Source: Ascidiella aspersa (lineage: Eukaryota). From it: a stretch of DNA of 64,000 nt. Location of the stretch: the NCBI GenBank assembly GCA_963924565.1, contig OZ004607.1:23932001-23996000 (forward strand). Direction: 5' to 3'. The translations under genes were made by a program, and so were the position numbers. Under the pieces are notes generated by a model. The model saw nothing but the letters and a program-made list of their open reading frames with translations. It did no database searches and was not told the origin of the DNA. How positions within the stretch are numbered: the stretch's first letter is position 1; every line of letters starts with the position of its first letter. Below are positions 4,507-46,900 of the stretch, one piece after another.

Positions 4507-7024
4507 GCTTAAACGAAAGAAGTTACAAAGGGTTTTTTAAAGAGTATACATTCTGTCCAATTAAAGGGCGCGAGTAGGCTCGTGGTGCACAAAGTGTCAC
4601 CAGTACCGGATTAACTATGTGCGGGGCCTGTAGCAGAGTGTGGGGCCTGTAGCAGATTGATTTGTTGTACAAATAATGACCGGGAATAAGGCTAATTGAA
4701 TATTTTATAGATTGTTTCTACATTCTATGGGTTTGTTTACGTTTTGATGCTGTGTTTTTACCTAGATCAGCGCTTCATTGCCGTTGCGCCGTGGAAGGCC
4801 GCCAAATGCGTCACGGAAAAACGGATAACGTATTTAAAATGTTGGACATATTTTTTTTAACAATATATTTTGGCAATGTAATAAAAACTTGCAAGAAATT
4901 TAAAAGAAATGCCGGTATACCCAAAAAAATCGCGCTCGCTTCGCTCGCCAGGTGTGCCTTCACTTCAAAATGTTAACAAACACTTAGCTAGATTAACATT
5001 AAATGTTATCGCGTTCCCTCAAAGTAGTTTTATTACACTTTTCATTAGTAGTATATCATAGTGTGGATGACGGCGTGTGAATTTTAAACAAAACAAACGC
5101 TTTTTCTCGCTTTGCGACAACACTTTACTTTCTCCACGTAATTAGCCTAAACACGTTTTTAAGTGCAAAAACGATCCGATGCCCCGCTGATTCACTGTAG
5201 TTTCAACATTAAAATAACACAATTCTTAGTTATCATTTTGTGCGGCCCGCAGAGCCCTTTCTGAGTTTTGCATTTAGGGCTGTATATACAAGTAAAAAAG
5301 TTATCAATAGAAAAAGTTTGAGTATAGCGTAAATTAAATAATTTTCTGCAGGCCATAGCCTATATGTTTGCCTGGATTTGGACCACACTATGGTTCGGTA
5401 GCTTCTGCGAACAAAGATCATTTTTCGTCGTATGTGTAATCTTCTCGTACCGTCTAGCCTTAGACGCTCACAATACTTTTAAATAAAAACTTGTTAGTCT
5501 CCCACACAAAAAGTTAAAACATTGACGGGTTTACTTAAAATGAAATACACTTTTTATACTGCTAAACTAAATACAAATAATACCTATGGTGAGCACCTGT
5601 TTAAAATAGAAAAAAAAAAATAGAAACACCAAAAATGTTATGCGCGGGTCGTCCTAAAAAAAATATAAGGTAGACTATTTCACATTTTGTGAATTGTATT
5701 AATCGAATGAAACAACATAGAAATGCTTGATATACCATTTATTTAGAACGGTAGAAGTCAGAGAGAAAATATTTCAGTGTTCTCCACTTAAACAAGATAT
5801 GAAGTATGTTAAACGTCAAAAAACAAAAAGACGTGTAAAAGGCACACTTTGACGTCAAAGCCAGTTGACATCCAAACATAATTGGGGATAATCTTTCCTA
5901 CTTTACAATGTTCTATTCGGGAACCCATTATCTTTTTGGACAATGAAAAACGAACATAGCGTCGGCAACTTCACAAGCTTACTGAAAAGTAACTATGATA
6001 TTACACATGTCGGAGATCGTTAGGCGAAGGGCGACTTTTATCTGTGAATTTTCGATAATTAGTTCTACAGCAAGAAATTAACTTGTTTTTGACAAAAAAT
6101 ATCACATTTCAGGGTTGACCATTAAAATTTGCACTCGCGAGTCGAGTGCCAACCAATGAGCACTCGCCAGGACGAAATAACACTCGCCAAAAATGTCGTC
6201 AGGCCCGTCTGCATATTTCGGTCCTACCAAATTGTTTTTTAATAACTTATCCTGCCTTACTATTTCGGTGTATAAACATAGTTCTAAAAAAGGCAAATCA
6301 GCGTGTTTATTTACACGCACGGATGTACAAATGGAATGTAGTTATATGCTCAACACTAACTACTGTTTTTTATCGGAAATCCTTACGCCCACAAGTAAAC
6401 AATAGCTAAATTAATAATACTTTAAAATATAATAATCAAAAGCTATATTGATTTTATGTTTGAATCCGACTCATAGATTTGTGGTCATTACCAAGTTCTG
6501 GGAAAAATTTTAAGGACTTAAAACGATTAATTTTTTCTGTTAGAGTTCTTGCTCCTGTATATTAGCTTACCAATAACATCAACGTCGGAATAAAACAAAG
6601 TTCGGAAAAGACCAAAATAGGACTTTATAATACCTAATAGTCGTAGTAATTAGGTCAACCGGAAAAAGTCCTAAACCCATCGGGCTAAATGGCCAGAATC
6701 AGGATTTTTTTTAATTTTACCTAACCCATTCCCCGCCCCTAAGTACTTCACTAATCCCACTAATAATTTAAAACCTAACCTATTTTGTAACCCCACCCAT
6801 TACCCACCAATAACCCCAAAGAGGGCCGAAAAGATTCGGTGCAAACTAGGGCGTCCAAACGTCGACAACAAAACGGCCGATGTCAAACCCGTGGCCCCCG
6901 ATCGTCCTACCCTCTCCATACAGTTTCAGACGTTATTTTGGCCATTTAGGCCTTATTCAGGTGAACAGCAAAATAGTCTAGCAAAGCTAGCAATTCAGGT
7001 CAGACACAATAAACAGATCCTAAA

Positions 7025-7070
7025 AGATATATATATATATTTCGCCAATCAAGGCATTGTCAGTATATCT
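7025..7070 (-). ncRNA. Minimal type-I hammerhead ribozyme, core-mutated copy (CUGACAA)
   Basis: Minus strand reads AGATATA-CTGACAA-T-GCC-TTGATT-GGC-GAAA-(TA)n-TATATCT. G8>A breaks the C3-G8 pair. Confidence 0.7.
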
Positions 7071-7318
7071 GAATAAAAACAAACGCAACAGTATAAGAAT
7101 AAGTCAGAAACATTAAAAATTAAATAAATCAAAGTAAAATAACGAAAATATAAAAAACTATTAAATTGTAGTGACAGCCAATGTGTGCAACCCCTGTACA
7201 GAAACAATAAGCACGGGTCGAGAGAAACGCGGCAACGCAAAACAACGGCACAAAAACTGCAAGGCAAAAAGAAAAAATGGAGTAGAGGCGTAAGGAAACG
7301 ATAATAACCAGACAAATA

Positions 7319-43364: not shown

Positions 43365-43951
43365 TCGTGAAAAGACTATGTAGTTACCATAAGCTGTCCT
43401 TCGAGCTTTTAACTCTACCGAGACAAGTTAATTGCCCTAATACTGCCGTCACATTACGCCCTGATGCTTTTACACTGTGGTACCATGTAGTGTCTACCCT
43501 TCCGTCCTTGATTACTGAAGCCTATTACTTGACGCATTTTTATTTATTTTTGCCTTGACATGCGATAATAGAACAATACGCTCTTTAGAAACAGAGGTGA
43601 ACTGAAATTCCAGACGACTTTTTTTTGTTCTGATTTCGGGTACTTTTTGTTTTGTGAGGTGTCTTCGTGAGTTCTATACGATAAATATATAGGTTAAATA
43701 CTTGTGCAAAACTGGGTTTTATCGGTACCGATCCGAAACAAAACTTAACGGAGATTTTAGCAATGGTTTACAATTGGACGTAGCGTTTCTACCTTAAAAG
43801 GCAACATTTTTAGAACTGATAAACTGTTATCATTAAGCAAACTTTAACTTGAGCGGGTTTAATTATCTGGAAAACATAACCTTTGCACGTTTAAATTTCA
43901 TCAACCATTTTTGCATAATAATGACGTCAGTTAATATGAGATCGGACGGCC

Positions 43952-46900
43952 TTATCCAATTATATTGTAGCCTATAACCCAGCAATGCCATGTCCTAAAA
44001 ATTGACAAAAATTTGTGCAACGCAAGCCAGAAAAAATACATTTACCTTCTTGGTTGTCCATTGGTGAGAATAATTCAATAAGGTCGTCCATCTTTTCCCA
44101 TGTTTCCCCGAGCTGATTTCCACGCATTTTGCTAAGATCCTATAGAATAAAGAGTGACTTTACTTGATAAAAATTAATAAGACTATGTTGTGAATACAAA
44201 TAAGATGTAACAAATAAGCGAACGCGCAGTAACTTAATACGCTGTTAAGAGATCCAACGCGACACCACGCCATGCACCCAAACTACATTTCTGCCTATTT
44301 TAACTAAGCAATTTAAAATTTTTAGGAAAAAGAGTATATTATATTAGTGCCTTTATAACGGCGATACTGGACAAGATTTCCTCATCTCTTTTGTTGGCAT
44401 CGCCCCTTAGCCTGGCTTCATTCTCCATGTTCATGTGCATGTCAAACTGAATCTGATCCAACTTGATGCCGTGAATCGTCACAAGCTGCCCGAAGCAATC
44501 CAACTCATCCGATTCGTCTGCATAGCGTATAGTGATAACAAGATGGTCACATTTTCAAGACCGAAAGCGATAGCTGTGTATCATGTAGGTTCTTAAGGGA
44601 AACGGAATTAAAAATAAAGCTTATATACCAGGTTTGTAGAGCTCTTCTGGCAAATGTAATTTTTATTCCGACGTTTCGACGTCCTATACAGGTCGTCTTC
44701 ATCAGGGTAAATAACACTGAATGCGACTAGTACAGTGCACGATAAACAAAGGAAAAGGATTTTTTTTTTTTTACATTTGCCAGAAGAGCTCTACAAACCT
44801 GATATTATGCCTGGCAGCAATAGCTTATATAAAGCTTATATACCATGGAAATTTCATTATGTGGGCTTCGTATAATAGTAAAAAGGTATGGAGAACACGG
44901 GTTAGCAGTTTTGGCGCGCCAACTTTATCAAGTCACAATAGCTACATGCCGTAAGAGCGTAACGTACCTTAGTTAAAACCTATAAACATTATAGAGAGGT
45001 CACTAGACTACTGTTATTGCAAGCTAGCTATTAATTTATTTTTAAAACGTGTGTAAGAATGTAACTCGGTATTAAATGGGTATTGGTACTACAGTGCGGC
45101 ATACCTATTTTTTATATTCGAATTAAAGCTACAAACGACTGTTTTTGTAAAGCATTACGTTTCATTATTTTTTGTATTTCTTTGCATTTCACGCCGAAAG
45201 ATTCATTTTGCTGCTGCAAGGCTTCTCTGATCTGCAGAATTTGGTAGATTTTCTGGGAAACCGATCTTGTGTCGCGTCGTGACTCTACAATTTGCCACAA
45301 CAAAGCGCGATTGACGCTATTCAGATTTGCTTTCATTTGGGAACGCGCCTCAGTCAATTCTGTAATTTAAAATAGTCATGTCTAATTCGAAACACAATCT
45401 ATAGCGATATACTTTGGTCGCAAAATGGTCCGGCTGCTGTGCCAGGACAAAAATGGATATAGCCTAGTCTTTAAAATAAAACGTCACAATTTACAGAGTA
45501 AGGTAAAACAAAGCAAAACATCATGAAACATACTTAATGTAAAATTTCTGTCGAACGGACGTATATTTTGGATTTAAAGCACGTCTAACTTAAAGCGTAG
45601 CTTTTTAAATGTTAAACTTTCAATTTTGTGTCTTCTGTGACGATCTGATAACACACATATGTGACCCCCAGTGATACCACCAAGCTTGAGAACACTTCTC
45701 TTTTATGTTGCTTGTCAATTGCCTTTACTGTGAGACAAACCTGATAATCTGAATCGACAACTCTCAATCGCGTCCCTTAGGTCTTTTACTTCTCGGTTCT
45801 TTAGAACAAGGTTGTCTCTCATTTTCTTGTAGCGAGACGAAGTTTCTTCAAACTGCGTTGATACCACAGTATACTGGGGGAGAAGGAGGGTTTTTTTGGC
45901 GTTCAACTCTTTAACAAGCTCCTGTAAACAAAAAGTATAATTTTATATTGTTGCTATTCGTCAAACATTTTCGGTATTTTTGACGGCCACAGTTACAGTA
46001 TTTTTTTATTCTGTGTTCCACTATGATTACAGAAGAAAAACAGTCGGTAAATAAACTGCAAACACACTAGTTGCCCTCGTAATTTTAAACAGAAATAGTA
46101 CTAGTTATGTAACAACAGCACAACATATGGTATTCAAAAAGAGTTCTATTTTAGATATCAACATCAGACTACAAATAGGCCTACATACTGGATCGTAAAA
46201 TATTAAATCGTTTAACATATAAAGAAAAAAAGGGTCTAAATAGCAGGCCAAAACAGCGATGGCCTCCTTAAATATTGGCGCCACAAGTCATTAACTACGT
46301 TCCCCGCACCTTATTCACGTTTATGCTCTCTTTAAGAACTTTAACGGTATCAGTTAGACTTGTTTTCATTGCTTCTGTGCGCCGTTTTCCTTCGACCATG
46401 CTGAGCTGCAAACCAGCCTCTTGAATTTGCAAATCTTCGTTTTCCTTTTTCAACACTTTAGCTTCTGCTACGTAGCCAAAATTCCTTCTCCTTTTGGAAA
46501 CATTAATATTTTTACACGCCTTACTTTGATTCACAATTCTCTGTATCGAAGGATTAAGTAATAGTACTACGAAGCTATTATACTTAGCTAATGCGGCGTC
46601 CGAACGGTTGATCCTATAGTTAAATTATATAATAGACATGAAGTTGCATAGCAACTTTAGATATTGTTCGACATTTCGAAGCTTACTAATGGGGTATACG
46701 AAAGTCAAAATTTACCACAACTATTGTTTTGTTGAAGTAGTCCTACCTTTGTTGGATAATATGACCATTTACGAATATTTTTTGTCCTCGAGACCGTTTT
46801 TTTCCTAAATCAATATACAAAAAATCTATTTAAAACTATGTTTTCTTAAAGCCATTGTTTTGCGAAGTCATCGGTATACTGACTTGCACTCCTCAATAGC

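What the first reader, a model, noticed from the sequence alone, without database searches (positions are those of the whole stretch)
6953..44845. Four distinct hammerhead-ribozyme retro-insertions (PLE system) within 38 kb, three with no coding capacity
Seen: inserts at 6966-8917, 31284-31507, 37235-37347 and 44631-44828. Each has a 12-17 bp AT-rich TSD and a minimal type-I hammerhead (N-UGAN-NA, one extra nt, stem II, GAAA, palindromic stem III, UH). Stem II and flanking sequences differ in all four. Known: Penelope-like elements carry minimal hammerheads in their pseudo-LTRs that cleave as dimers. Inference: at least four PLE families have been active here, and the 113-224 bp inserts are either extreme truncations or a non-autonomous ribozyme-bearing (retrozyme/SINE-like) class mobilised in trans.
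Basis: partly seen in the sequence, partly recalled or inferred. Interest (0 to 1): 0.85.

Follow-up and report, generated by a model that had tools for sequence, protein, structure and literature searches.

The report
Truncated Penelope-like retrotransposons with minimal hammerheads
The four inserts are real, mostly dead or truncated copies of Penelope-like retrotransposons that carry the small hammerhead-ribozyme motif described for this element class in 2014, so the finding is correct in outline but ordinary.

Summary
All four inserts exist at the stated coordinates, with 12-17 bp target-site duplications. Each carries a minimal type-I hammerhead (min-HHR) motif. A descriptor built from the published min-HHR features hits only these inserts in the 64-kb window: 5 motif starts against 0.02 per shuffle. 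Rfam hammerhead models do not detect them.

All four have the known Penelope-like element (PLE) insertion layout: two outward-facing 3' ends (an inverted arm plus a sense arm), a "tail" at one end only, and a TSD.

- Insert 1 is a dead, 5'-truncated RT/GIY-YIG copy.
- Inserts 3 and 4 are extreme 5' truncations of young families (98-100% identical copies). These families have RT/GIY-YIG-encoding parents and random truncation points, so they are not a separate ribozyme-only class.
- Insert 2 belongs to a family of two-armed copies of a discrete ~115-nt RNA. That RNA matches the 5' terminus of a family-1-type PLE at 57 of 58 nt, and its U3-A8 hammerhead overlaps the ORF start. Only here is the "SINE-like" reading partly tenable.

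None is a retrozyme: there are no tandem units, and the unit ends do not fall at the cleavage site. Every feature was already published in 2014, 2021 or 2024. This scan reached the same verdict elsewhere in this genome. Self-cleavage was not tested.

The parts
6953..6965 (.). Insert 1 TSD, left copy (TTATTCAGGTGAA)
6966..8544 (-). Insert 1 sense arm: a 5'-truncated family-1 PLE ending at the no-tail 3' end (...TTTTGCTGT). It comprises the 3' UTR at 6966-7540 and an RT C-terminal/GIY-YIG ORF fragment at 7541-8521. The fragment has three in-frame stops in the EN part and a frameshift near 8500, so the copy is dead.
7028..7063 (-). Insert 1 sense-arm hammerhead-like motif with G8 changed to A (CUGACAA...)
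8545..8840 (+). Insert 1 inverted arm: a second copy of the 3' UTR in the opposite orientation, 93-98% complementary to 6964-7269
8752..8787 (+). Insert 1 min-HHR with intact core: CUGACGA-U-GCC[UUGAUU]GGC-GAAA-(UA)n-UC
8841..8917 (+). Insert 1 77-nt tail. The same tail is present at exactly one end of the other family-1 insertions.
8918..8930 (.). Insert 1 TSD, right copy
31272..31283 (.). Insert 2 TSD, left copy (TATATTGCTCGA)
31284..31366 (-). Insert 2 no-tail arm. It carries a U3-A8 min-HHR at 31360-31329 on the minus strand.
31367..31392 (.). Insert 2 central filler. Its sequence is different in every genomic copy examined.
31393..31474 (+). Insert 2 sense arm. It carries the min-HHR UUGAAAA-U-GAAUAA[AGAG]UUAUUC-GAAA-CG-UC at 31397-31428. 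A9-U-G10.1 forms the ATG that opens the PLE ORF (MNKELFET...).
31475..31507 (+). Insert 2 33-nt AC-rich tail
31508..31519 (.). Insert 2 TSD, right copy
37223..37234 (.). Insert 3 TSD, left copy
37235..37245 (-). Insert 3 inverted arm, reduced to the last 11 nt of the family-3 tail (TGGAACACTAT)
37246..37347 (+). Insert 3 sense arm: about 100 nt of the family-3 3' end without the tail. It carries the min-HHR CUGAUGA-U-GGCA[UUAGAAAU]UGCC-GAAA-CG-UU at 37262-37293.
37348..37359 (.). Insert 3 TSD, right copy
44614..44630 (.). Insert 4 TSD, left copy (17 nt)
44631..44762 (-). Insert 4 no-tail arm: about 130 nt of the family-4 3' end. It carries the min-HHR CUGAUGA-A-GACGACCU[GUAU]AGGACGUC-GAAA-CG-UC at 44705-44670 on the minus strand.
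44763..44770 (.). Insert 4 T-run filler between the arms
44771..44828 (+). Insert 4 sense arm: 30 nt plus the 28-nt tail at 44801-44828
44829..44845 (.). Insert 4 TSD, right copy

Best explanation
The four inserts are products of target-primed reverse transcription by endonuclease-positive Penelope-like elements (PLEs).

In each insert, both ends of the staggered chromosomal break primed cDNA synthesis on element RNA. This is inferred from the layout, and it matches the Anolis PAc enzyme in vitro. The result is two arms whose element 3' ends face outward. One arm starts at the internal RT start site (no tail) and the other at the distal site (tail). The arms are joined in the middle with variable filler and flanked by an 11-17 bp TSD.

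Because reverse transcription starts about 50-60 nt downstream of the hammerhead cleavage site, even very short 5'-truncated copies keep the pLTR min-HHR. That is why inserts 3 and 4 look like 'ribozyme-only' elements.

Insert 1 is an older, dead, ORF-bearing copy. Insert 2 is a pair of full-length copies of a ~115-nt RNA that runs from the PLE 5' terminus to the RT start sites.

The min-HHR has no helix III loop. By the published model it could cleave only when paired with a second copy on the same strand or in trans. Its activity and role here are not shown.
For: PLE identity:
- L048 is a 652-aa relative, 92% identical over the shared region.
- The family-4 parent ORF has RT and GIY-YIG (L073).
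- The family-3 parent carries a degenerate PLE ORF (L038).
- The genome holds at least 376 PLE ORF candidates at 33-100% identity.

Insertion layout:
- All four inserts, and the other genomic copies examined, show an inverted arm plus a sense arm with a TSD.
- Exactly one tailed end was found in 5/5 family-1, 11/11 family-2, 12/12 family-3 and 11/11 family-4 two-armed insertions. The automated pairing gave 36 of 37.
- This is the structure published for PLEs (PMC8557442; PMC11167929).

Truncation:
- The 5' end points of family-3 and family-4 arms are scattered (reference positions 746-1186 and 1-1726), while the 3' ends are fixed.

Hammerhead motif:
- The descriptor gives 5 hits against 0.02 in shuffles.
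- The canonical GAAACGUH subclass has 1,398 exact genome matches against 0 for the reversed control, with many helix II variants.
- Six more PLE families carry a min-HHR about 250-1,100 nt after the end of their ORF.
Against: - No Rfam hammerhead model matches, even at E<=10. These models expect a helix III hairpin.
- Published min-HHRs cleave poorly in vitro. In PAc, HHR mutations did not affect insertion, and no RNA-seq reads ended at the cut site (PMC4209133, PMC11167929).
- In transcripts that cross both arms, the motif would be buried in a long hairpin. Insert 2 folds at -133.8 kcal/mol.
- No intact full-length parent was recovered for families 3 and 4. The longest copies seen are about 1.2-1.9 kb.
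- The dual-priming step is inferred from structure, not observed.
Confidence: 0.9

Rival explanations
1. The insert 2 family, and by extension the other short inserts, is an independent non-autonomous, ribozyme-bearing SINE-like lineage. It would have its own transcription unit and be mobilised in trans by PLE reverse transcriptase.
For: - In 11 of 11 family-2 copies, all 22 arms end at the same inner position, (G)ATGTTGAAAATG. The filler differs between copies, so the template RNA has a discrete ~115-nt length.
- The first look found about 1,842 candidate copies.
- L048 has a family-1 body ending in the last 65 nt of the family-2 3' module. This suggests the same machinery starts on family-2 RNA.
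Against: - The discrete 5' end coincides with the 5' terminus of the full PLE L048, and the first 58 nt match at 57 of 58 positions. The short RNA could therefore simply be a transcript from PLE pLTRs rather than a separate lineage.
- No promoter was shown.
- The sampled copies were top hits to a two-armed query, which favours full arms.
- Families 3 and 4 contradict this reading outright.
Confidence: 0.3
2. The inserts are metazoan retrozymes: tandem hammerhead units processed to circular RNAs and copied by PLEs.
For: They carry type-I hammerhead motifs, are small and non-coding, and coexist with PLEs. This is the association proposed in PMC7229834.
Against: - There is no head-to-tail tandem unit in any of the four inserts.
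- Where two motifs are present they are on opposite strands.
- The ends of the family-2 unit lie 32 nt upstream of the predicted cleavage site, not at it.
- The motif is the minimal PLE type, not the canonical looped type of retrozymes.
Confidence: 0.03
3. The short inserts with terminal inverted repeats and TSDs (inserts 2 and 4) are MITE or foldback DNA transposons.
For: Both have TIR-like arms (83 nt and about 30 nt) flanked by direct repeats.
Against: - The ends are asymmetric, with a tail on one side only.
- Arm lengths and the central junction differ between copies.
- TSD length varies from 11 to 17 nt.
- The arms are the 3' ends of RT-encoding elements.
Confidence: 0.02
4. The hammerhead-like motif is conserved for a reason other than self-cleavage, for example as an RNP or RT recognition structure, or because it is tied to the translation start.
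For: - A9-U-G10.1 forms the ATG that opens the L048 ORF, and helix II plus GAAAC encode MNKELFET.
- The motif sits at a fixed 70-83 nt before the first RT start in all four families.
- Published data show low in vitro activity, and PAc insertion is not affected by HHR mutations.
Against: Core nucleotides, the U3-A8 covariation and compensatory helix II changes across families are what a ribozyme fold predicts. PLE hammerheads from fungi cleave well.
Confidence: 0.3

Closest known systems
Minimal hammerhead ribozymes (min-HHR) of metazoan Penelope-like elements (Cervera & de la Pena 2014, PMC4209133)
   Same: [quoted passage not shown]
- Helix II of up to 6-8 bp, a short helix I, and no helix III loop with a palindromic 15.2-16.2.
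- A U3-A8 core variant.
- Many sequence families per genome, with most copies solitary or paired on opposite strands 100-700 bp apart and attributed to truncated PLEs.
   Different: Nothing categorical. The differences are new sequence families in a different genome. The family-1 group has a short 3-bp helix II (GCC/GGC) and a (UA)n helix III.
PLE insertion architecture and the two RT start sites ('tail') (Craig et al. 2021, PMC8557442; Frangieh et al. 2024, PMC11167929, Anolis PAc)
   Same: - 5' truncation, an adjacent inverted 5'-truncated copy, and a tail at one end.
- AT-rich targets.
- A hammerhead overlapping the ORF start, with the cut site 26 nt after the ATG.
- RT start sites about 70-115 nt into that region.
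   Different: - The family-1 tail is 77 nt rather than 30-40 nt.
- In the genomic copies sampled here the tail is on exactly one end in essentially every two-armed insertion. PAc in vitro showed no strand difference in start site.
Metazoan non-LTR retrozymes (Cervera & de la Pena 2020, PMC7229834)
   Same: Small, non-coding, type-I hammerhead-bearing elements that coexist with PLEs and are probably mobilised by them.
   Different: Retrozymes are head-to-tail tandem units of 150-450 bp with canonical hammerheads, and they yield circular RNAs. The window inserts are not tandem, carry minimal hammerheads, and have ends unrelated to the cleavage site.

Membership tests
Penelope-like elements (EN+ PLE) | A single ORF with a reverse transcriptase followed by a C-terminal GIY-YIG endonuclease | tested here: met
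   - Insert 1 fragment: RVT_1 at E 0.016 and GIY-YIG at E 6e-4, both below Pfam gathering.
- L048 and L073: both domains present.
- L080: GIY-YIG at 26.8 bits, above the 22.6 cut-off.
- The motifs FIDD/YVDD and GIY...YIG are visible in the translations.
Penelope-like elements (EN+ PLE) | Insertion structure: 5' truncation, an adjacent inverted 5'-truncated copy, a one-sided 3' tail, and a TSD | tested here: met
   Seen in all four window inserts and in about 40 other genomic insertions of the same families.
Penelope-like elements (EN+ PLE) | Direct pseudo-LTRs (a partial tandem) flanking the ORF | tested here: not met
   No direct repeat flanks insert 1 or L048. The window shows only the inverted configuration, which the literature lists as an accepted alternative.
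PLE min-HHR (type-I hammerhead variant) | Catalytic boxes N3-UGANNA and GAAA, with a C3-G8 or U3-A8 pair and a UH cleavage triplet | tested here: met
   The sense-arm copy in insert 1 fails this test because G8 is changed to A.
PLE min-HHR (type-I hammerhead variant) | [quoted passage not shown] | tested here: met
   All four families and six further PLE families show these features. I built them into my own descriptor, so this is not an independent test within the window.
PLE min-HHR (type-I hammerhead variant) | Match to a curated hammerhead covariance model (Rfam) | tested here: not met
   No hammerhead family matched at E<=10 on the whole window or on 653 nt. This is expected, because the models require a helix III hairpin.
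PLE min-HHR (type-I hammerhead variant) | Self-cleavage, as a dimer | not testable with these tools
   Cofolding gives an intermolecular helix III for families 1 and 3 only.
Metazoan retrozymes | Head-to-tail tandem units, each bounded by hammerhead cleavage sites | tested here: not met
   There are no tandem copies in the inserts. The family-2 unit begins 32 nt upstream of the cleavage site.
Metazoan retrozymes | Expression as unit-length circular RNA | not testable with these tools
   No RNA data were available.

The most novel reading that the evidence does not exclude
Two points are not excluded.

(a) PLE integration in vivo may be obligately asymmetric. In a two-armed insertion, the two DNA ends would always use different RT start sites. 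About 40 of 40 insertions across four families have exactly one tail, whereas PAc in vitro shows no strand bias.

(b) The insert 2 family may be a self-sustaining ~115-nt SINE-like parasite of family-1 PLEs. Its RNA would begin at the hammerhead core and would be used to initiate reverse transcription before a switch to PLE RNA. The chimeric 3' end of L048 fits this.
Probability: 0.3. Interest if true: 0.4.

Novelty: new member of a known kind. Interest (0 to 1): 0.2.

Why it matters
The main value is for annotation. In this genome, short TSD-flanked hairpin-like or "ribozyme-only" repeats in introns and promoters are PLE debris, not a new ribozyme system, microRNA genes or MITEs.

The near-identical copies show that several PLE families have been active very recently. 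That makes this genome a usable natural data set for the still poorly understood PLE integration mechanism, including the one-sided tail, the two-armed insertions and the short pLTR-derived RNAs.

The finding does not open a new question about hammerhead ribozymes.

Tried and rejected
- Rfam cmscan on the whole window (gathering threshold and E<=10) and on five excised motif regions found no hammerhead family. The only notable hit was a generic hairpin match of insert 2 to a plant microRNA model, below threshold.
- tblastn with the insert 1 protein and the L048 protein found no ORF within 1.5 kb of the first sampled copies of families 2-4. This briefly suggested non-coding families. Searching with the 5'-most sequence of longer copies then recovered the RT/GIY-YIG parents.
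- The apparent 87-95% identity among family-2 copies first looked like age. The alignment showed near-identical arms with unrelated central filler.
I therefore did not try read laying and have no RNA evidence for cleavage or expression.
- RNA cofolding was inconclusive for families 2 and 4.
- The MITE and retrozyme readings were considered and rejected (see the rival explanations).
- I did not build a covariance model, because pattern and descriptor searches answered the question.

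
Full report
**Observation**

Each is flanked by a perfect direct repeat of the target. The repeats are 13 nt for insert 1, 12 nt for insert 2, 12 nt for insert 3 and 17 nt for insert 4.

Each insert contains a motif with the hammerhead catalytic boxes. I wrote a descriptor from the features published for PLE minimal hammerheads. It requires N3-UGA-N-N8-A with N3/N8 Watson-Crick, 0-1 nt after A9, and a helix II closed by G10.1-C11.1. It also requires GAAA, a self-complementary helix III and UH.

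On both strands of the 64-kb window the descriptor hits only the four inserts. The hits are +8752, +31397, -31360, +37262 and -44705. Three hundred dinucleotide-preserving shuffles gave a mean of 0.02 hits, and none gave five. The descriptor was fixed after I had seen the sequences, so this overstates the significance.

An independent genome-wide count supports the motif. The exact pattern CTGATGANG-N7-30-CGAAACGTH occurs 1,398 times in the 308.6-Mb genome. The reversed control pattern occurs 0 times. The matches include many helix II variants that keep pairing.

Rfam's hammerhead models find nothing, even at E<=10 on 653 nt. This is expected for a motif without a helix III hairpin, but it is a failed membership test and I record it as such.

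**What the inserts are**

Insert 1 carries, on the minus strand, an ORF fragment with an RT motif (FIDD), a CX2C linker and the start of a GIY-YIG domain. Its closest relatives include L048, which has a 652-aa ORF with both domains. The window copy is 5'-truncated. It has a frameshift and three in-frame stops in the endonuclease part, so it is dead. Its two arms have diverged by 2-7%, so it is not recent.

The three short inserts belong to abundant families, with 918, 274 and 1,842 first-look candidates.

Copies of family 3 (insert 3) and family 4 (insert 4) are 98-100% identical to the window copies. They share fixed 3' ends but have scattered 5' ends.

Longer copies of family 4 run for at least 1.76 kb and encode an RT plus GIY-YIG ORF (L073, 496 aa). 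Longer copies of family 3 run for about 1.2 kb and carry a degenerate PLE ORF (L038).

Inserts 3 and 4 are therefore extreme 5' truncations of ordinary PLEs.

**Shared architecture**

Every insert has two arms whose element 3' ends face outward. One arm ends at a fixed internal position. The other continues into a family-specific tail of 77, 33, 27-33 or 28 nt.

- Insert 1: ORF-bearing sense arm without a tail, plus an inverted 3' UTR arm with the tail.
- Insert 3: an 11-nt inverted piece of the tail, plus about 100 nt of sense arm without a tail.
- Insert 4: about 130 nt of arm without a tail, a T-run, then a 30-nt arm with the tail.
- Insert 2: arms of 83 nt and 82 nt, with a 33-nt tail on the second.

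The same holds in other genomic insertions. Exactly one tailed end was found in 5/5 family-1, 11/11 family-2, 12/12 family-3 and 11/11 family-4 two-armed insertions. Automated pairing gave 36 of 37, and the one exception was a marker artefact.

This is the published PLE insertion structure. That structure comprises 5' truncation, an adjacent inverted 5'-truncated copy, and a 30-40 bp tail at one end (Craig et al. 2021). It is explained by two RT start sites and by cleavage and extension of both target strands (Frangieh et al. 2024).

**Insert 2**

The alignment of 11 copies shows near-identical arms but a different 20-50 nt filler in each copy. All 22 arms stop at the same inner position, (G)ATGTTGAAAATG. 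The template was therefore a discrete RNA of about 115 nt.

That position is the 5' boundary of the full PLE copy L048, and the next 58 nt match L048 at 57 of 58 positions. They encode the first 20 residues of its ORF, MNKELFET....

L048 in turn ends with the last 65 nt of the family-2 module, fused to the normal family-1 3' end. I read this as template switching during reverse transcription. That reading is an inference.

Insert 2 is thus a derivative of a family-1-type PLE rather than a fourth independent PLE. It is the only insert for which a discrete 'SINE-like' unit is tenable. Whether it is a self-sustaining lineage or a by-product of short pLTR transcripts cannot be decided from sequence.

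**The hammerheads**

All four motifs show the hallmarks that Cervera and de la Pena (2014) listed as emerging beyond their descriptor. [quoted passage not shown] The U3-A8 covariant core, seen in insert 2, is also described there.

Helix II differs completely between families while staying paired. Six further PLE families in this genome carry a related min-HHR after the end of their ORF.

The motif sits 70-83 nt before the first RT start in all four families. This explains why even 100-nt truncations retain it.

In families 1, 2 and 3 the 'extra' nucleotide is U, so A9-U-G10.1 reads AUG. In L048 this is the first ATG of the ORF. The predicted cut site is 26 nt after the A of that ATG in families 2 and 3, the same figure reported for Anolis PAc.

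Function remains unshown. Cofolding predicts an intermolecular helix III only for families 1 and 3. Transcripts spanning both arms would form long hairpins that bury the motif. I could not obtain RNA reads.

**Comparison and verdict**

The features are those already published in 2014, 2021 and 2024. Earlier follow-ups in this scan reached the same conclusion on other parts of this genome (s1-788655, s1-787239).

The retrozyme reading fails its defining test, because there are no tandem units bounded by cleavage sites. The MITE reading fails on the asymmetric ends and variable junctions.

With about 1,400 canonical motifs plus thousands of variant copies genome-wide, four in 38 kb is only a mild local enrichment. 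I rate this a new member of a known kind, with low interest.

Two observations may be worth a specialist's attention. One is the apparently strict one-tail rule, which contrasts with the lack of strand bias in vitro. The other is the discrete ~115-nt family-2 template.

Noticed in passing
window 31406-31428 and 37271-37293; L048:730-755: In families 1, 2 and 3 the unpaired nucleotide after A9 is U, so A9-U-G10.1 spells AUG. In L048 this is the first ATG of the 652-aa PLE ORF. The predicted cut site lies 26 nt after it, the same figure published for Anolis PAc. Helix II plus GAAAC therefore also encode the N-terminal peptide (MNKELFET / MALEIAET).
   Followed up: partly
loci L002-L072 and window inserts: In about 40 two-armed insertions from four PLE families, exactly one end carries the tail. 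Tail/tail and none/none were not seen. PAc in vitro showed no strand difference in RT start site, so the in vivo coupling is unexplained.
   Followed up: partly
L048:3020-3105: The family-1 PLE copy L048 ends with the normal no-tail terminus (...TTTTGCTGTT) fused to the last 65 nt of the family-2 module instead of the 77-nt family-1 tail. It looks like a template-switch chimera.
   Followed up: no
window 8841-8917: The family-1 tail is 77 nt and is conserved across copies. That is about twice the 30-40 bp quoted for PLE tails.
   Followed up: partly
window 58354-58427: A roughly 60-nt near-perfect AT-rich hairpin gives weak sub-threshold matches to several unrelated microRNA models on both strands. 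It is probably another small inverted repeat or element. I did not examine it.
   Followed up: no
window 31284-31507: Insert 2 folds into an 83-bp perfect hairpin (-133.8 kcal/mol) and scores 65 bits against a plant microRNA model, below the gathering threshold. Young two-armed PLE insertions could be mistaken for, or act as, hairpin small-RNA sources.
   Followed up: no
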